Assembly (NCBI RefSeq): GCF_035594765.1
Contig: NC_085844.1
Span: 188,310,107 to 188,374,106, forward strand
Direction of reading: 5' to 3'
Length of the DNA: 64,000 bases
Source: Anolis carolinensis
Lineage: Eukaryota
The notes beneath the pieces were generated by a model. That model was not told the DNA's origin, ran no database searches, and was given only the letters and a program-made list of their open reading frames with translations. Each line of letters starts with the position of its first letter. Position 1 is the stretch's first letter. The translations under genes and the position numbers were made by a program. Positions 12,014 through 62,650 of this stretch are shown here, one piece after another.

Positions 12014-15000
12014 TCATTGCAGCAATTCCTCCCAGCAGATGGGTCTAGAAAAAACTTCCCTTTCCAGCCACAAGTCATAATTCATTTGGAAATCTTCAGG
12101 TAGCTCAACACGTTGGCCCAGAACGCTCTGCAAACAGTTATCCACTGGCAGAAAATCTGGGTTGTTATGTGTGCGATCATAGCGTCGAGAATTGAAGCGC
12201 TCTATGCTGGCACGCAGTGCACATTCTTCAGCCTGGAAGTCCCATGGACGAGCATCCAAGTCTGCAGAAGAGAGGAAGCAAGCAATCAACCAACGCAGCC
12301 AAGGCCCATACATCCCACTGTATTAAAAAATACTACAAGGAACATGTTCCTATGCAACCTCCTGTATGTTGTGAGCAGATAAAAACTCCTTCCTGTTGGA
12401 AAGATCCTCAGTATTAGATGAGGATCAGGAATAATTTTATATCAAATAAATACCAAGACTGGCCATAACGGCAACACTACTGAAAGTCATGGGATTGTGA
12501 CTGTTACAGAAAAATATATATATTTCCAGAGTTGCTTTTCAGTTAACAATACAAGTTATACAACTGAAATGTACAGGGAAATGCAGACTTTTCGTCATAT
12601 TTATAATAATAATACTTTATTTATAACCTGCTCTATCTCCTCAAGGGGACTCAGGGTGGTTTGTGACAGGTGAAAATTCACGAATAACCACAGATCAAGG
12701 TTAGGGGAGAAGAGGAGCCTCGGAACATACCATTGCCATAAGCCCAGTCATCATTCAGCCGATGCCGCACCTTCTGATAGATTGCGGACATTGTTTTCAT
12801 ATTGCTCTTTCTCCACTGTCGCCCCAGATACTTTGTCTGCACCTTGAGAAGCTTCAGAACATAGAGCTGCATCATGGCCTGCTTCACTTTAAGGGCTCGT
12901 TTCAGAATGGGAGCTGACTTGAATACTACTAGCATCTGAGAAGGCAAGGTAATAGAAGTTCAATTGCTTCATTACCAACAATTTGCTCAAGATTTAAATG
13001 CTCAGTAAAGACATATTAGTGTTAGGAACAAGATACACAGAAATTTAACCCTACAGAGGTGCTTCTACTCACCATAGTTCTTGAGTGTTTCCATTTAGTT
13101 AATTTATTCAATATCCTTAGTAGATTAATGCAGGAAAAAAGGTTCCGCCAGCAAAACTGATTGTTATCTCCAGCCTCCTAGAGGACAAAGAAGCCAAAGA
13201 AAGTATTCTAGAACATGGCCATACAGCCCAGAAAACATACAACAACCCTGTGATCCCAGCCATGAAAGCCTTCAACAACACAAAGACATCTCTATTTCCT
13301 CTGTTTGTCCATCTCTTTTAGGATGAACGATGGAGGGAGCTTAGCTCACCAGACTCTCTGCAGTCAGCTCAGGCAGCTCATGCACCACACAGTATGGATA
13401 ATCCAAAACAGAGATGCTGAAAGACATAAAATATCCCAGAAACTTCAGAACAGATGATCCATCTGGCCAATTATACTATCTCTTAAGAGTTGCTGACAGG
13501 AGTCTTGTTCAAACATGTAAGAAAATGATTGTGACAATTCACATCTTGGCTTTTTAGCTTGAGATACTTATTTGCACATCTTTCCATATCCACTCTAAAT
13601 ATCCAATATCTAAAGATCCAATATCTAGCAAAAGAAATAAATCAACGAACTACTTAATGAAGTTTTGCAAAACCTTATTTCAAATTCTATCAAAGAAGTC
13701 TAGTGGCATTACATGGCCTTAGAAGGGCATGTGAATAGTGACTCAACATGGGTTGTTCAGATAACATATTTTTATCAAACTAGAAATGGCGTTGCTAGAA
13801 ATTAAGTTTCCTCGGCAAACCTTCCACATTCAATTTCAGTGAGTGACTAGACAATCCCAAAGGTCCCAAAGATAAAAATGTATTTGGATATTTCAGAACA
13901 CAAGTATGGCAGTGATAGTCCCACTTACCTATTTTTGGCTGTAATATATGACATAATATTTTGATTGAAGAATTTCAATATAAGGGGAATGCAATTGGCA
14001 AACACCAGGTGTTGGGCCATGTATTCAAACTAATGCAGGGGACAGAAACAAGAGGGTTTATGAAGCAAAAATGCAAAGTTATTGTCAATATTCTCCCTTC
14101 TCCACACCTTCCAATGCTGTTAATTCATGGAAGCTCATGCATACCTGATAGACATGATTTAACTTAAAGTGTTTGAGCAACAGCAGCAAAACAGCAGAAA
14201 TGGCCTTTACGATTATCTCTTTGTGCCTGTTGACGTCAACTCCCAGCTTCATACTCTGCAACACAGTTGTTCTGGAAGCCAAAAAAGTAATATTAACTTG
14301 ATATGCCTTCACCCTTAGACTTACTGAATAGTTAATTTTATATCCTGCCTCCCAATACAGCATTCAAGGTGGCTATGGACACTTCAGTGCATTTTTAACT
14401 GAACCAGCATTTTATTACTGTTACTACTGCTGCTACTTCTTCTTCAGTTTATATCCCCCCCTGTCAAGGACAGAACGCCACAAGGTTCAAGATAACAGAG
14501 TTTATTGGATTACAGAACTCAAAAATGCCCGTAAAATACAAGGGCCAGGCAGTATTAGCCTTTAGGAGTAAAAAGAGGCAAGGAAAAACGTTCAAAAGAT
14601 AAACCGGATTAAACCGGAGTTTAATCCGGGTAAAAACAAACTGCTTGCTTCAGCCTGGGGATAAACAAAACAAAAGCCGAGGAACAAAAGATACAAAAGA
14701 ATGCAACTAATTGGCAGCAGATTCCTCTCTGCTGCCAACACTGTGCTTAGAGTAACTTGCGTTGCTCCCACACACACAGCAGACAGGATTTCCAACACGA
14801 ACAGATCAGCCAAGGATTGTAGCAGTAGAGTAGACCCAGTTCGTCTCAGCACAGGAAAAAACACCAGTCTTCAGGAAAGCGTCCCACACAGATCCCAAGC
14901 GTTCGTCCAGATTACCTTGCCCAACGCAATTTGCAATTGCTCCCAAGCCCCATTTTATGCCAGTTACAAATCCTCATCACTGTCAGCTGTCCTCCTTAAC

Positions 15001-18000
15001 CCGGGCGTTTCCTCATCACTTTCCTCATCAGAGCTGGAACACCTCTGACTACGCCCCACAGCATCTCCAGCTGTGGATCCCGTCCCATCCCTCCAGCTAA
15101 GCCATGGGTCTAATCCTGAAGGTCCCCATTCATCTTCTATCCCATCATGACCAGTGGCACCCAATTCCTCCCTTACCCGAGCCCAATCCATCTCATCCTC
15201 CTCCGAGCTAACCAGCCCCTCCTCCATTCTCTCCGTAAACCCCTCAAAAGACTCTTCGTCAGATGGTGCTGCAAAAATGTCTCGCAGTCTTTTTCTTTCT
15301 CGCTCCTCGAGAGTATCTGACTCTCGAGGAGTCTTACGCCCACGTCTGTCAGTAACAGAGCCATGAGGCTCAATCATAACACTATCCCCTCTCACAAAGG
15401 CCTCCTCCCCCGATGGCGGAGAAGTGGCAGTGATACCCTCCGCTATAGCACCACGACGACTAGAGGTATCTAGTTTCAACAGCGAACGATGAAAGACTGG
15501 ATGGACCTTTAAACTAGACGGTAAACGCAAACGAAACGCAACGGAAGAAATCTTTTTAACGATAGGAAAGGGACCCAAATATCGCGGCGCAAACTTTCCC
15601 CCAGCCTGTTTAATATGTTTGGAAGATAACCACACCAAATCCCCTTCTTCCAACTCCTCCCCTGCCTGCCTGTGGCAGTCAGCCTGAGTCTTTTGCGTTG
15701 CCTTAGCTTCCAACAGTAAGCGACGGGCAACATCATGCAATGCAGCCATTTCCGAAGAGCGGTACACAGGGTCCGAAGAGACCACATTGGTCGACGGCGC
15801 CACACCTCCCCGTGGGTGAAAACCATAAGTTAGCTCAAATGGCGTATGCTGACTAGACGTGTGCACCGCATTATTATAAGCGAATTCCGCCACCGGTAAC
15901 CACTTCACCCAAGCCGTGGGTTGATCTAAACAAAAACAACGCAAATACTGCTCTAAGAGCCCATTAACCCGTTCCGACTGTCCATCCGTCTGCGGATGAA
16001 AGGCTGAAGAAACGTTTAACTTAGTCCCTAAGCACTCATGGAAATGTTTCCAAAAGCGTGACACAAATTGCGGAGCCCTATCTGAAATAATCACCTCAGG
16101 TGCTCCGTGCAAACGATAGATGTGCTTAGTAAATAGTAAGGCCAACGTAGGGGCCGCCGGAATGGTTGAACAAGGAATAAAATGAGCCAGTTTGCTAAAT
16201 AAATCCACCACCACCCAAATACAAGTATAACCCCCAGACTTAGGCAAATCTGAAATAAAATCCATGGAAATGATTTGCCATGGCCTCTCCGAAACAGGTA
16301 GAGACGACAGCAACCCTCTAGGGCGCCCAACAGGCGTCTTACTCTGCTGGCAAACAGCGCAGCTGTCACAAAAGCGCAGAATGTCTTGCCGCATCTTTGG
16401 CCACCAGTAGCTCCTGGTGATAAGCTGTACGGTCTTGAACCTGCCAAAGTGCCCAGCCATGGGTTCGTCATGGTGGGCTCTAATCACCTCCAACCTGAGG
16501 GCCCCCACTGGTACGTAGACCTGCCCCCTGCGTACCAATACTCCGTCTTGATCTTGTAGATGCGGCAGTATTGTACGGTTACCTGCTGATAGCAGCATCA
16601 GTTGCTCCTGAGTCCACACATCATCCCTCTGAGCCTCAAGGATCTGGTCATGTAACCCAAGCTCATTATCTACAACACATAGAGAGGCAGTAGGCAAGAT
16701 GGTCTGACATACTACCTGCTCATTGGTCTTAAACTCCGGCTTGCGGGATAAAGCATCGTCCGCAAGTTTGCCTTCCCCTCCACGAACTGCACCTTGAAGT
16801 TAAACCTGGAGAAAAACAAAGTCCATCGGATTTGACGCTGGTTTAACTTCTTTGCTGTTTGTAAGTGCTCTAAATTCTTGTGATCAGATCTGACCACGAT
16901 CTGGTGCCGTGCCCCTTCAAGCCAGTGCCGCCACACCTCAAACGCCACCTTAATCGCCAACAACTCCTTCTCCCATATGGTATAGTTCTGCTCGAAGGGT
17001 GTTAGTTGCCGCGAGTAAAATCCACAGGGACGCAAGGTCCCTGAGGAATCCTTCTGAGACAATACAGCCCCCAACGCGTAGCTAGAAGCGTCCGCTTCTA
17101 CCACGAACGGTTTGTCAACATCAGGATGTGTTAGTATGTTGTCCGATTGAAAACTAGACTTAAGTTGTAGAAACGCATCGTGAGCTTCCCGCCCCCACAC
17201 AAATGGCTGTTTCTTACGCAGGAGCTGCGTCAAAGGTACCGTGAGCTTTGCAAAATTCGGAATAAACTCCCGGTAGTAATTAGCGAAACCTAAGAACCTT
17301 TGTACATCCTTCTTAGTCTTTAGCTCCTGCCATGAGTTAACGGCGTCGACCTTATGTGGATCCATTTTAAGTTCCCTACCTGACACTACATGACCTAGGA
17401 ACTCCACTTCAGGCACATGAAAAACGCACTTGGAAGCCTTGGCGAAAAGCCCATTAGCCCGCAGACGGTGCAGAACCTGCTTGACATGTTGACGATGTTC
17501 TTTCTCGTCCTTAGAAAAAATCAAGATATCATCCAAATAAATCACTAAAAATTGGTCAATTAGGTCCCTGAACACATCGTTCATGAACCTCTGGAAGACC
17601 GCAGGAGCGTTGCAAAGTCCGAAAGGCATGACTCGGAACTCGTGGCATCCGAAACACGTGTTAAATGCCGTCTTCCATTCATCCCCTTCCCGTATACGGA
17701 TTAAGTTATATGCCCCCCGCAGGTCAAGCTTGGTAAAAACCTTAGCCCCTTGCACCCTTGATAATAGTTCCGAGATTAAAGGTAGCGGGTACCTATCCCG
17801 AATGGTGTATTTGTTTAGGATCCGATAGTCGCAGACCAGCCTAAGTTCCCCAGTCTTTTTGGCTACAAAGAATACTGGTGCCGCAGTTGGGGAGCTAGAT
17901 GGGCGAATAAACCCCTTGGCTAAATTTTCATCTAGAAACTCCCTCAAAGCTTGCCTTTCCGGTACAGTCAAGGCATACAGCCTTCCTGCTGGCAATTTCG

Positions 18001-21000
18001 CACCTTCTGCTAACTTGATGGCGCAATCATATGGCCTGTGCGGTGGTAATTTGTCCGCTTCTCTTTTACAAAATACATCAGAGAACTCCCCATACTCAGC
18101 AGGCACTCCCTCCATATCAGATTGAGTAACATTCAGAGTGCAACAATCCTGCCTCTTTAAGGTCACTTTACGTGTCGACCAATCTACTTGTGGGTTTACT
18201 ACAGCTAGCCAATCCATCCCCAGGATCACATCATATCTAGGCAAGCTCGTAATATCCCACACAAACGTTCCCGTTACTCCCTGCACCTCCCACATTACTG
18301 CTGAGGTTTCATGGTTAACCACCCCAGTCTCCAGCAGTCTCCCATCTGCTCCTTCCACCCACACGTCGCATGCCTTGCGCACTCTAGGAATGCCATGCTT
18401 CTTAGCAAACTCAATATCTACATAAGAGACCGTAGCCCCTGAGTCCAGCAGTGCCAAAGTAGAAACAAGTTCCCTTCCCCCAACAGATAATGTAATGGGT
18501 ACGAAAACATGCTTCCTCCCCTCAGTTGACTGCTTGAGGAGCCCTAGTGCGTTGGACTCACGTCGCACTAGGGCTGGCCTTTTCCCGAAAGCTGAGAAGG
18601 TTTCACATTACAGTTTTTGGCAAAATGCCCCGCATTCCCACAGTACAAACACAACCCCAGCTGCCTCCTACGGCTCTTTTCCTCTGTAGACAGCTTTTTA
18701 AAGACCCCAAGCTCCATAGGCTCTTCCCCCATCACCACAGGTGCCCTGGTAATATGCATGGGTGGCGCACACATTGCTTTCGAGTGTTTACGAGCCTCGA
18801 ACCTTGCGTCTAAACGCAGCACCTTAGCTACTAAGGCGTCCCAATTTTCAGCCGGCTCCAAGCGTGCTAATTCATCCTGGAGCATATCACTTAACCCGGC
18901 AGTAAATAAAAGCATGAATGCATTTTCCCCCCAATCCAGCTGGTGGCGATACAAGTTAAACTTATTTAAGTAATCCAAAACAGTCCCCTTTCCCTGTTTC
19001 AACCGATACAGAGCCCACCCAGCATTCTCCGTGCGGAGAGGATCCCCAAAAGTGTCAGTTAATAACTTTTTGAAATTATTCAAATTGTCCTTGACTGGGT
19101 CATTTCCCAAAATTAAATTAGTGGCCCATTGTCCTGCGGGACCGGTCAACAAACTCAAAATAAATGCCACCTTGCTAGTGTCTGTAGGAAAAGCATGAGC
19201 ACTGAGCTGGGAAAAATAAAGCTCCACTTGTGCCAAAAAGGTTGGCAACTTGCACCTGGTTCCGTCAAAGCGTTCAGGAGTCAAAACATGTCCTTTCACA
19301 GCATGAGCTGCTTGGCTGACGGTAAAAGCCGTTTGTAATTGGTCAAATTTGGCCCTTAACTCCTCCATCGTCTTCCTGATGGGTTTATTGCTGCAATAAA
19401 CTTTTTATGGCGTTGGGCAATCTGTCAAGGACAGAACGCCACAAGGTTCAAGATAACAGAGTTTATTGGATTACAGAACTCAAAAATGCCCGTAAAATAC
19501 AAGGGCCAGGCAGTATTAGCCTTTAGGAGTAAAAAGAGGCAAGGAAAAACGTTCAAAAGATAAACCGGATTAAACCGGAGTTTAATCCGGGTAAAAACAA
19601 ACTGCTTGCTTCAGCCTGGGGATAAACAAAACAAAAGCCGAGGAACAAAAGATACAAAAGAATGCAACTAATTGGCAGCAGATTCCTCTCTGCTGCCAAC
19701 ACTGTGCTTAGAGTAACTTGCGTTGCTCCCACACACACAGCAGACAGGATTTCCAACACGAACAGATCAGCCAAGGATTGTAGCAGTAGAGCAGACCCAG
19801 TTCGTCTCAGCACAGGAAAAAACACCAGTCTTCAGGAAAGCGTCCCACACAGATCCCAAGCGTTCGTCCAGATTACCTTGCCCAACGCAATTTGCAATTG
19901 CTCCCAAGCCCCATTTTATGCCAGTTACAAATCCTCATCACTGTCAGCTGTCCTCCTTAACCCGGGCGTTTCCTCATCACTTTCCTCATCAGAGCTGGAA
20001 CACCTCTGACTACGCCCCACAGCATCTCCAGCTGTGGATCCCGTCCCATCCCTCCAGCTAAGCCATGGGTCTAATCCTGAAGGTCCCCATTCATCTTCTA
20101 TCCCATCATGACCAGTGGCACCCAATTCCTCCCTTACCCGAGTCCAATCCATCTCATCCTCCTCCGAGCTAACCAGCCCCTCCTCCATTCTCTCCGTAAA
20201 CCCCTCAAAAGACTCTTCGTCAGATGGTGCTGCAAAAATGTCTCGCAGTCTTTTTCTTTCTCGCTCCTCGAGAGTATCTGACTCTCGAGGAGTCTTACGC
20301 CCACGTCTGTCAGTAACAGAGCCATGAGGCTCAATCATAACACCCCCCTTCCCAGTCTGGTGGCTTACAAACATTCAAATAAATACTGCTAACCAAGTAC
20401 ATTGTACAAAAGTCAAATATTTAATTCAACCAAAAATTAAAGCAAACCACTAGAAGAACTACAACAAATATAAACACTTGTTTATTAAAAGATAGCAGTG
20501 AGAGTGCCAGTCCTTTTTATTCTATTCTTTTTATGTGGTATAATATAATCTTCCTCTAGTAAACTCATTTAACCGATTCATATGGATTATTTTTGTTATT
20601 GTATTCATGGCTGAAGTGTGTTTTAGTTGTTTTGTAACCTGCTTCAAATTTATTTATAAAGAAATGGAGGGGTATAAAATACACACACAATGTTTATTCA
20701 ACACTTAGAGACAGTCACATAAAATCTATTCATTGCTTTCTCTGTTCATTAACTAAATATATTAAATTCCGCAATAATGAAACTCACGGCATCTCCTCTG
20801 GCAAAACATCTGCTAAGATGTTAATGGAATCAGTCTTGGCTTTGGAGGTGGGTGCTGCAGCCAGCAAAATTTTCAGCAAGGCAATCTGTGAATCAAAGTT
20901 TACTTTAATGAGGGGAGAAGACAGCCAAAGTACCCAAATATTGCAGAAGAAATAGGGTATTTAGACAGAAATAATACATCAAAGGATGATTTTTAAAATA

Positions 21001-45059: not shown

Positions 45060-62650
<17,591 letters not shown>

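What the first reader, a model, noticed from the sequence alone, without database searches (positions are those of the whole stretch)
14964..15480. Integrase reads into the LTR and ends in a LEDGF/TND-binding-motif mimic: candidate new integration-targeting module
Seen: after the GPF and HPVFH motifs, where sushi/chromovirus integrases normally carry a chromodomain, this integrase has none. Its frame instead runs through the PPT and the whole U3 of the 3' LTR (137 codons) and stops just before the TATA-like box. The tail has a basic NLS-like patch (RRGRK...RKR), then [18 protein letters not shown] (DIF...FEGF at 15281-15237), and several CK2-type acidic serine runs ([21 protein letters not shown]). 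Known: helix + acidic linker + FxGF is the IBD-binding / TND-interacting motif that CDCA7L/JPO2, MLL1, PogZ and IWS1 use to bind LEDGF/p75 and related TFIIS-N-terminal domains. As I recall them, the CDCA7L motifs read DIFNAPSDDEEFVGF and LRRIF...EDFAGFT, very close to this peptide. C-terminal integrase tethers are established for Ty5-Sir4, Ty1-AC40 and MLV-BET, and HIV IN uses LEDGF through a different interface. Inference: this family replaced chromodomain targeting with mimicry of a host motif to tether integration to transcribed gene bodies. Both insertions in this window are in introns of housekeeping genes, which fits but is only n=2.
Basis: partly seen in the sequence, partly recalled or inferred. 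Interest (0 to 1): 0.95.

Follow-up and report, generated by a model that had tools for sequence, protein, structure and literature searches.

The report
Lizard Gypsy integrase tail mimics LEDGF-binding motif
A young Gypsy-type jumping gene of the green anole encodes the last 138 residues of its integrase inside its own LTR. This selected, disordered tail carries a peptide matching the motif host proteins use to dock on the chromatin reader LEDGF, so it may aim insertions at active genes as HIV does; binding is untested.

Summary
A Ty3/gypsy element lies on the minus strand, with 920-bp LTRs at 14462-15381 and 19423-20342 that differ at 2 bases. Its integrase frame runs through the polypurine tract and 138 codons into the 3' LTR. 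It stops 4 bases before a CATAAAA box.

- **No chromodomain:** Pfam finds none, although almost all relatives carry one.
- **Real coding sequence:** dN/dS is 0.16-0.28 in the integrase frame only. The fusion is open in a second genomic copy and in a diverged subfamily.
- **Motif anatomy:** AlphaFold2 predicts a disordered tail with one helix ([14 protein letters not shown]). An acidic 8-residue linker and FEGF follow. This is the published anatomy of the LEDGF/HRP2-binding motif.
- **Closest solved match:** of 177,635 PDB sequences, the only hit is the LEDGF IBD-JPO2 motif 1 chimera 6EMO (E=1.6, weak on its own).
- **New here:** wall-lizard (Podarcis) Gypsy integrases carry one or two similar FxGF motifs just after a retained or decayed chromodomain.
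- **Precedent:** an LTR-encoded targeting tail is already known in plant CRM elements.

Binding to LEDGF and a bias toward genes remain untested. This scan already reported the same anole family on other DNA. No paper describing it was found.

The parts
14462..15381 (-). 3' LTR (920 bp, TG..CA)
   Evidence: Direct repeat with 19423-20342, 2 differences
19423..20342 (-). 5' LTR
   Evidence: flanked by a G-run target duplication
14964..16697 (-). Integrase ORF including the LTR-encoded tail and TAA stop (577 codons)
   Evidence: Pfam Integrase_H2C2, rve, SH3_Tf2-1, no Chromo
15382..15393 (-). Polypurine tract GAGAGGGGATAG, read in frame as part of the integrase
14967..15380 (-). 138 codons of integrase tail encoded inside the LTR U3
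   Evidence: dN/dS 0.16-0.28 in this frame only. AF2 predicts it mostly disordered
15282..15347 (-). Basic patch RRGRK..x12..RKRLR, bipartite-NLS-like; its basic residues are invariant across families
   Evidence: Alignment A2 invariant columns; the NLS reading is inference
15237..15311 (-). TIM/IBM-like module: predicted helix [14 protein letters not shown] (15311-15270), linker APSDEES (15269-15249), FEGF (15248-15237)
   Evidence: Anatomy per PMC9987994 and D/ExExFxGF per PMC8022399
15165..15185 (-). Second predicted short helix (WARVREE) within the conserved MDWxRVRE block
   Evidence: function unknown
15192..15209 (-). Acidic serine run SSEEDE (CK2-type by sequence)
   Evidence: S, E, D and M are invariant here
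15009..15038 (-). Acidic serine run [10 protein letters not shown]
   Evidence: SSSDE is conserved in family B
14953..14959 (-). TATA-like CATAAAA, 4 bases after the stop codon
   Evidence: promoter role is inferred, no start site mapped
16760..16790 (-). Break of the pol reading frame between RNase H and integrase in this copy
   Evidence: The L002 copy reads straight through here
16712..18568 (-). Protease-RT-RNase H ORF
18568..19368 (-). gag ORF
57026..57501 (+). U3 coding part of a diverged second-family LTR (solo or truncated). It keeps [24 protein letters not shown] (FEGF 57168-57179), EDEM, MDW, W-rich block, SSSDE and EEDL-stop. One frame break lies near 57300

Best explanation
The element is a recently active member of a squamate chromovirus-type Ty3/gypsy lineage. 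Its integrase has lost the chromodomain. [quoted passage not shown]

The tail carries a short linear motif built like the LEDGF/HRP2 IBD-binding motif (an FxGF-type TND-interacting motif). It has an amphipathic helix ending in a Phe anchor, an 8-residue acidic and phosphorylatable linker, and FEGF. Just upstream of, and running into, the helix lies a bipartite-NLS-like basic patch.

The proposed mechanism is as follows. The motif docks the integrase-cDNA complex on the TFIIS-N-terminal-type domain of LEDGF/PSIP1 or HRP2. The PWWP domains of those proteins read H3K36me2/3 nucleosomes. Insertions would therefore be biased toward transcribed gene bodies. Lentiviruses reach the same tether through a different, folded interface.

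**Shown:** the anatomy, the coding status, purifying selection, conservation and recurrence of the motif, and the match to JPO2 motif 1.

**Inferred:** binding, CK2 regulation, nuclear import and target-site bias.
For: 1. **The ORF really enters the LTR** and has no chromodomain.
2. **It is coding sequence under selection.** The window copy differs from a second genomic copy at 28 bases, split 5/5/18 by codon position, with dN/dS 0.16. Against subfamily C there are 87 differences (26/13/48), with dN/dS 0.28. The second copy against C gives 0.20. Excess of synonymous changes has p between 1e-5 and 2e-8. The sense +1/+2 frames and two of the three antisense frames give values from 0.85 up to more than 4.
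3. **The fusion is open elsewhere.** In L002 one ORF of 897 codons runs RT-RNase H-integrase-tail. It is also open in UniProt model P0002, whose integrase core is 93% identical but whose tail is only about 60% identical.
4. **Invariant residues cluster in the motif.** Across 8 tails, including the very diverged family B, invariant residues cluster in RRGxKT, RKRxR, P.D...FEGF and S.ED.M.
5. **Predicted structure fits.** AF2 gives a disordered tail with a helix exactly at [14 protein letters not shown] (pLDDT 74-79), followed by non-helical [11 protein letters not shown]. This fits the published motif anatomy and the D/ExExFxGF consensus.
6. **PDB match.** The only PDB hit of the tail is the LEDGF IBD-JPO2 motif 1 chimera 6EMO. 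A profile built from 14 lizard motif segments again ranks it first, at E=0.11.
7. **Recurrence.** Podarcis integrases P0024, P0127 and P0128 have a Pfam Chromo domain followed by two such motifs. P0018, P0023 and P0122 have one motif after a decayed chromodomain. Apart from an RT-derived FLGF in one chimeric gene model, none of 103 other relatives' tails (about 11,500 residues) has F.GF.
8. **Low chance expectation.** The full F-x8/9-F.GF layout arises in 6.5e-5 of shuffles.
Against: - No binding data exist, and no structure prediction with LEDGF or HRP2 could be run here.
- The PDB match is short and not significant by itself (E=1.6, or 0.11 with the profile). Other solved LEDGF partners (JPO2 motif 2, POGZ, IWS1, MLL1 chimeras) were not retrieved.
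- The Podarcis motifs alone retrieve no LEDGF entry.
- The helix is strongly basic (RERKRLR), unlike JPO2 motif 1, and it would approach a domain surface that has a basic patch.
- Purifying selection covers the whole tail, not only the motif, so other tail functions are equally selected.
- U3 also has to act as a promoter, which adds DNA-level constraint.
- The integrase tree does not resolve whether the Anolis and Podarcis motifs share one origin.
- Insertion bias toward genes was not tested.
Confidence: 0.55

Rival explanations
1. The tail is a selected functional extension of the integrase, but the FxGF peptide serves another partner or role. Candidates are a different TND (IWS1, TFIIS, Elongin A, PPP1R10, MED26), nuclear import through the basic patch, or control of integrase activity or stability by an acidic phosphorylated tail. 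LEDGF/HRP2 tethering would not be its function.
For: - Selection covers the whole tail. There are further conserved blocks of unknown role: MDWxRVRE, a Trp-rich block and the acidic C-terminal end.
- The invariant basic residues look like a bipartite NLS.
- The match to 6EMO is weak statistically.
Against: - FxGF is reported as needed by, and characteristic of, LEDGF/HRP2 partners, while other TNDs use the helix alone (PMC9987994).
- All three Phe residues of the tail sit at motif positions, with the same 8-residue spacing as JPO2 motif 1.
- FxGF recurs in three diverged lizard lineages but not in the tails of 103 other relatives.
Confidence: 0.25
2. The peptide is a passenger: a fragment captured from host CDCA7L/JPO2 mRNA, or a chance look-alike in an acidic low-complexity tail. 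The ORF would then be kept mainly because U3 DNA is constrained as a promoter.
For: - 12 of 16 residues from DIF to GF are identical to JPO2 motif 1, which could reflect capture.
- U3 must carry regulatory DNA.
- The tail as a whole is found only in Anolis among 1.84 billion representative proteins.
Against: - DNA-level constraint would not concentrate changes at third codon positions of one frame.
- The motif is the best-conserved block in family B, whose LTR is otherwise barely alignable at the DNA level.
- Similar motifs in Podarcis argue against a recent one-off capture.
- No similarity to CDCA7L beyond the motif reached E 0.001.
- Capture would explain the origin of the peptide but would not exclude function.
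Confidence: 0.12
3. The LTR ORF is not part of the mature integrase. It might be removed by protease processing, or expressed separately as an accessory protein in the way nef or sag occupy retroviral U3.
For: - The protease cleavage sites are unknown.
- An ATG (Met2 of the tail) opens the same frame at the LTR start, and gene callers pick it up as a 137-residue ORF (P0005).
Against: - No stop separates the integrase from the tail in any of three independent sources.
- U3 of the 5' LTR lies upstream of the element's own promoter, so a separate product has no obvious transcript.
- In Podarcis the motifs follow the chromodomain within the same chain.
Confidence: 0.08

Closest known systems
JPO2/CDCA7L IBD-binding motif 1 (PDB 6EMO) and the IBM / FxGF-type TIM class (MLL1, POGZ, IWS1, MED1, ASK, DPF3a)
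   Same: - A helix with a Phe anchor, an 8-residue acidic Ser-containing linker and FxGF, all in a disordered region.
- The D/ExExFxGF consensus is met.
- 12 of 16 residues from DIF to GF are identical to JPO2 motif 1.
   Different: - It is carried by a retrotransposon integrase, not a cellular transcription regulator.
- The helix is very basic and overlaps an NLS-like patch.
- Binding is untested.
Lentiviral integrase-LEDGF/p75 tethering (HIV-1)
   Same: The proposed outcome is the same: an integrase coupled to the LEDGF/HRP2 IBD, and through PWWP to H3K36me3 gene bodies.
   Different: HIV uses the folded catalytic-core dimer interface. Here a disordered C-terminal linear motif would copy the cellular ligands.
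Plant centromeric CRM group A chromoviruses (CR motif; PMC3059260)
   Same: These are chromovirus-type elements in which the chromodomain position is taken by another putative targeting motif. [quoted passage not shown]
   Different: - The motif, the partner (unknown for CR) and the target (centromeres) are different.
- The hosts are plants, not squamates.
- No sequence comparison with the CR motif was made here.
C-terminal integrase tethers: Ty1 IN-AC40 (bipartite NLS/targeting domain, PMC7459421), Ty5 IN-Sir4, MLV IN-BET ET domain, chromodomain-H3K9me
   Same: A short C-terminal integrase module binds a host chromatin or transcription factor and sets insertion sites. In Ty1 it overlaps a bipartite NLS, as may be the case here.
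   Different: - The proposed partner and chromatin target are different.
- Those cases are shown experimentally. This one is inferred from sequence and evolution.
Podarcis muralis Gypsy integrases P0024/P0128 and P0018/P0023/P0122; Logan contig protein P0127
   Same: They belong to the same squamate integrase clade. They carry FxGF with an upstream aromatic helix-like segment and an acidic or Ser/Thr linker in the integrase tail.
   Different: - The chromodomain is retained (Pfam Chromo in P0024, P0127 and P0128) or decayed.
- One family has two motifs in tandem.
- Integrase identity to the anole family is only about 45%.
- Whether these tails are LTR-encoded is unknown.

Membership tests
LEDGF/HRP2 IBD-binding motif (FxGF-type TND-interacting motif) | FxGF core | tested here: met
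   FEGF at tail residues 45-48 (15248-15237). It is invariant in 8 tails and in 14 lizard segments
LEDGF/HRP2 IBD-binding motif (FxGF-type TND-interacting motif) | Acidic residues before the core: D/E-x-E-x-F-x-G-F (PMC8022399) | tested here: met
   D-E-E-S-F-E-G-F in this copy. Subfamilies have D at -2 ([16 protein letters not shown]), a conservative change
LEDGF/HRP2 IBD-binding motif (FxGF-type TND-interacting motif) | Upstream alpha-helix with a conserved Phe or aliphatic anchor, joined by an acidic linker of 8-16 residues (PMC9987994) | tested here: met
   AF2 helix [14 protein letters not shown] (pLDDT 74-79) ending at F36. The 8-residue linker has the same spacing as JPO2 motif 1. Family B has Leu at the anchor
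LEDGF/HRP2 IBD-binding motif (FxGF-type TND-interacting motif) | Lies in an intrinsically disordered region | tested here: met
   Tail mean pLDDT 56, with no fold apart from two short helices. No Pfam domain
LEDGF/HRP2 IBD-binding motif (FxGF-type TND-interacting motif) | CK2-phosphorylatable Ser/Thr in the linker | tested here: inconclusive
   S40 (S-D-E-E) fits S-x-x-E/D by sequence and is Ser or Thr in all subfamilies. Phosphorylation itself cannot be tested here
LEDGF/HRP2 IBD-binding motif (FxGF-type TND-interacting motif) | Physical, FxGF-dependent binding to the IBD/TND | not testable with these tools
   No LEDGF or HRP2 sequence could be obtained, so no complex prediction was run
Chromovirus (chromodomain-bearing Ty3/gypsy) | Chromodomain at the integrase C-terminus | tested here: not met
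   No PF00385 at E<=0.01. Only a possible remnant of the first strand (GEEAFV against GEEEFEV) lies just before the polypurine tract
Chromovirus (chromodomain-bearing Ty3/gypsy) | Integrase core groups with chromodomain-bearing elements | tested here: met
   Nearest non-family relatives (<=48% identity overall, up to 51% over the integrase core) almost all carry PF00385. The element sits in a squamate clade with chromodomain-bearing Anolis, Podarcis and snake elements
CRM group A-type architecture (targeting motif encoded in the 3' LTR) | [quoted passage not shown] | tested here: met
   138 codons lie inside the LTR. Precedent in PMC3059260
CRM group A-type architecture (targeting motif encoded in the 3' LTR) | CR motif sequence | not tested
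The hosts and clades differ, so membership is not claimed

The most novel reading that the evidence does not exclude
A clade of squamate chromovirus-type retrotransposons has evolved, within the integrase tail, a linear-motif mimic of cellular LEDGF/HRP2 ligands. In some lineages this mimic has taken over from the chromodomain.

Podarcis and Anolis would then preserve the stages: chromodomain plus two motifs, decayed chromodomain plus one motif, and no chromodomain with an LTR-encoded motif.

This would be the first LTR retrotransposon shown to use the H3K36me3-reader tether that lentiviruses use. It would reach that tether by convergent evolution through a different interface.
Probability: 0.45. 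Interest if true: 0.9.

Novelty: new variant of a known kind. Interest (0 to 1): 0.8.

Why it matters
How LTR retrotransposons of vertebrates choose insertion sites is largely unknown. Whether any of them uses LEDGF as lentiviruses do is an open question. A 2023 fly study states that there are no data for such an interaction (PMC10018349).

This family gives a concrete, peptide-sized hypothesis that can be tested without the element itself. It offers a natural series from chromodomain to linear motif across lizard lineages. It is also a second, independent case, after plant CRM elements, of a targeting module encoded in U3, where coding and promoter functions overlap.

If the hypothesis is true, it shows host-motif mimicry by a transposon and convergence with HIV on the same chromatin tether. 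It would also help explain the genic distribution of young Gypsy insertions in anole genomes.

Tried and rejected
- **Tail-only protein searches:** the word-index search and the full HMMER search against 1.84 billion representatives found only Anolis carolinensis proteins. One additional hit, the giant repeat protein P0007, is spurious. No CDCA7L orthologue reached E 0.001, so similarity to the host protein does not extend beyond the motif.
- **PDB searches with Podarcis motif regions:** these gave no LEDGF entry, only a weak papillomavirus E1 match, or nothing at all.
- **Profile search of the PDB:** it retrieved 6EMO but no other IBD-partner chimera.
- **DNA for the Podarcis proteins and for P0002:** not on record. 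I therefore could not ask whether their tails are LTR-encoded, nor compute their dN/dS.
- **Gene context of the window insertion:** the UBL4B-like ORF is not on record. The 'intron of a housekeeping gene' claim is unchecked.
- **RNA evidence:** no run on record as RNA holds the stretch. Only Logan contigs of uncertain kind were available. They show a high-copy family but no transcript ends.
- **Complex prediction:** not run. No LEDGF or HRP2 IBD sequence could be obtained from the session's own results, and the reference option covers microbes and phages only.
- **Literature:** I found no paper linking an LTR-retrotransposon integrase to FxGF or TND-interacting motifs.
- **Single or double origin of the motif:** the integrase tree leaves this open.
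- **BET ET-domain-type motif in RKRLRDIF:** considered by eye and rejected, because the alternating hydrophobic/basic pattern is absent.

Full report
**What is there.**

The finding lies in a Ty3/gypsy LTR retrotransposon on the minus strand. Scan notes name the genome as green anole, and the protein hits are all Anolis carolinensis.

- The LTRs are 920 bp: 15381..14462 at the 3' end and 20342..19423 at the 5' end. They run TG..CA and differ at 2 positions (15182 and 14831).
- The flanks are runs of G, consistent with a 5-6 bp target duplication. It is therefore a young insertion.
- Three ORFs make up the interior:
  - gag at 19368-18568
  - protease-RT-RNase H at 18568-16712
  - integrase at 16697-14964
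- Pfam gives Retrotrans_gag; RVP, RVT_1 and RT_RNaseH; and Integrase_H2C2, rve and SH3_Tf2-1 respectively.
- In this copy the pol frame breaks between RNase H and integrase, near 16760-16790. A second genomic copy reads straight through that point.

After GPFPIV and HPVFH, the integrase frame passes the polypurine tract (15393-15382). It then continues for 138 codons inside the LTR (15380-14967). The TAA stop lies at 14966-14964, and a CATAAAA box follows at 14959-14953.

No chromodomain is detected. Outside the family, the nearest integrases are at most 48% identical overall (up to 51% over the integrase core) and nearly all carry PF00385. The residues just before the polypurine tract (GEEAFV) align with the first strand of relatives' chromodomains (GEEEFEV). 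This is a weak hint that the LTR boundary now sits where a chromodomain once began.

That U3 ends right at the stop codon is inferred from the TATA-like box only. No start site could be mapped.

**The tail is real coding sequence.**

I compared the LTR-encoded 414 bases between three sequences: the window copy, a second full copy found by chance in locus L002 (NCBI GCA_035594765.1), and a diverged subfamily LTR in the same locus.

| Comparison | Differences | By codon position (1/2/3) | dN/dS |
|---|---|---|---|
| Window copy vs second copy | 28 | 5/5/18 | 0.16 |
| Window copy vs subfamily C | 87 | 26/13/48 | 0.28 |
| Second copy vs subfamily C | 79 | 23/9/47 | 0.20 |

- The excess of synonymous changes has binomial p between 1e-5 and 2e-8.
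- The two other sense frames give values of 0.85 to 1.9, and two of the three antisense frames give 1.4 to 4.3.
- The antisense frame that shares wobble positions gives 0.3-0.4, as expected.
- Variants among the many genomic copies seen in public contigs also fall mostly on third positions, 8 of the 13 listed.

The integrase-tail fusion is uninterrupted in two further sources. In the L002 copy one ORF of 897 codons runs from RT to the tail's end. In UniProt model P0002 the integrase core is 93% identical but the tail is only about 60% identical.

A much more diverged LTR in this window (57026-57501, + strand) is barely alignable outside U3. It still encodes the following blocks, although with one frame break:
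- RRGRKT
- RKRIREIL
- [10 protein letters not shown]
- EDEM
- MDW
- a Trp-rich block
- SSSDE
- EEDL-stop

**Anatomy of the motif.**

Across eight tails the invariant residues cluster in RRGxKT.RE.D, RKR.R, P.D...FEGF and S.ED.M.

AlphaFold2 predicts a mostly disordered tail (mean pLDDT 56). It contains one confident helix, [14 protein letters not shown] (pLDDT 74-79), followed by non-helical APSDEES and FEGF. There is a second short helix at WARVREE.

Published descriptions define the class as follows:
- A TND-interacting motif has an obligate helix with F/V/L/I anchors and an acidic, often phosphorylated, linker of 8-16 residues.
- An FxGF element follows. All known LEDGF and HRP2 partners have it and need it (PMC9987994).
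- The core consensus is D/E-x-E-x-F-x-G-F (PMC8022399).

The anole peptide meets each sequence feature. Its spacing equals that of JPO2 motif 1.

A phmmer search of the tail against all 177,635 distinct PDB sequences returned a single hit, the LEDGF IBD-JPO2 motif 1 chimera 6EMO. Tail residues 30-49 aligned to KEVADIFNAPSDDEEFVGFR at E=1.6. A profile built from 14 lizard motif segments again ranked 6EMO first, at E=0.11.

These E-values are weak, as expected for 16-20 residues, so the match is a pointer and not proof. Shuffling the tail gives any F.GF in 0.46% of trials and the full F-x8/9-F.GF layout in 0.0065%. The tail's only three Phe residues are exactly the three motif positions.

**Recurrence outside Anolis (new relative to the earlier scan notes).**

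Among 126 relatives collected, F.GF in the post-SH3 tail occurs only in lizard elements.

- **Anole family:** one motif, no chromodomain.
- **Podarcis muralis P0024 and P0128, and Logan-contig protein P0127:** a Pfam Chromo domain is followed by two tandem motifs of the types RFWEEQF-TTDEEE-F.GF and WEAVF-STDDDSSS-FRGF.
- **Podarcis P0018, P0023 and P0122:** a chromodomain-like stretch that Pfam no longer detects is followed by DWLFTPTLSASTFQGF and acidic residues.

Apart from an RT-derived FLGF in one chimeric gene model, none of 103 other relatives' tails (about 11,500 residues) has the motif.

In an integrase tree all these lizard lineages fall in one squamate clade. The Podarcis clade and the anole family are each fully supported. 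Their mutual order relative to chromodomain-only anole and snake elements is unresolved. One origin with losses, or two origins, both remain possible.

The second Podarcis motif (VFAPTEEEDSSFRGF) resembles the anole one ([14 protein letters not shown]) closely enough to suggest shared ancestry. This is inference. The Podarcis segments on their own do not retrieve LEDGF entries from the PDB.

**Most likely mechanism.**

- **Shown:** a selected, disordered integrase tail encoded in U3, carrying a conserved linear motif of the LEDGF/HRP2-ligand type.
- **Inferred:**
  - The motif docks the integration complex on the IBD/TND of LEDGF or HRP2. Their PWWP domains read H3K36me2/3, which would bias insertion to transcribed gene bodies.
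  - CK2 phosphorylation of the linker Ser, and perhaps of the other acidic Ser runs, may tune affinity as in cellular partners.
  - The invariant RRGRK-x12-RKRLR patch may be a bipartite nuclear localisation signal overlapping the helix. This would recall Ty1, where the integrase NLS doubles as the AC40-binding targeting domain (PMC7459421).

My probability that the peptide binds LEDGF or HRP2 in an FxGF-dependent way is about 0.55. My probability that this measurably steers insertions is somewhat lower.

**Comparison with what is known.**

The concept of a C-terminal integrase tether is established: Ty5-Sir4, Ty1-AC40, MLV-BET, chromodomains and HIV-LEDGF.

The architecture also has a precedent. 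[quoted passage not shown]

What I could not find in the literature is any LTR retrotransposon integrase with an FxGF / TND-interacting motif. A 2023 Drosophila study explicitly notes that there are no data for a LEDGF-LTR integrase interaction (PMC10018349). I therefore class it as a new variant of a known kind.

The same anole family was already reported by this scan from other windows (s1-528306, s1-528310, s1-535982, s1-545975). My independent checks agree with those notes. The Podarcis series and the CRM precedent do not appear in the notes that my searches returned.

**Limits.**

- No LEDGF or HRP2 sequence could be obtained, so no complex prediction was run.
- Gene context and insertion bias were not testable here.
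- RNA evidence was unavailable.
Breaks are only located, not resolved.

Noticed in passing
window 19360-19422 (minus strand, just inside the 5' LTR): The bases after the 5' LTR (GATTGCCCAACGCC...) are not an obvious tRNA-type primer-binding site. Another first-reader note (s1-554227) proposes Tf1-type self-priming. I did not test it.
   Followed up: no
P0004 (UniProt H9GE36_ANOCA, glucosidase II alpha subunit model): This host gene model contains about 50 residues identical to the LTR tail (ELGATGHDG...SSSDEE). A family LTR therefore lies inside the GANAB gene and has been taken as an exon, either by annotation error or by real exonisation.
   Followed up: no
L002:8523-9440 and L002:9591-15600: A subfamily-C LTR and a full family-A copy lie only about 150 bp apart in opposite orientation on anole chromosome record CM069369.1. 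This could be chance or a local insertion hotspot.
   Followed up: no
window 14881-15216: In public contig sets, summed depth over the C-terminal half of the tail plus the TATA region is about 10-fold higher than over the rest of the LTR in two runs, and about 3-fold higher in another. This segment may be shared with other, more numerous elements or derivatives.
   Followed up: no
window 14967-15236 (tail downstream of FEGF): Further conserved blocks of unknown role are kept even in the diverged family B: S.EDEM, the MDWxRVRE helix, a Trp-rich W..GLD..W..WRD block, SSSDE and the terminal S(D/E)EDL-stop. They may be additional linear motifs.
   Followed up: partly
window 15182: One of the two LTR differences is a non-synonymous change private to this 3' LTR (Ala where the 5' LTR and all other copies have Thr). 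It probably arose as a mutation after insertion.
   Followed up: yes
The exact product is not on record in the contig index.
   Followed up: no
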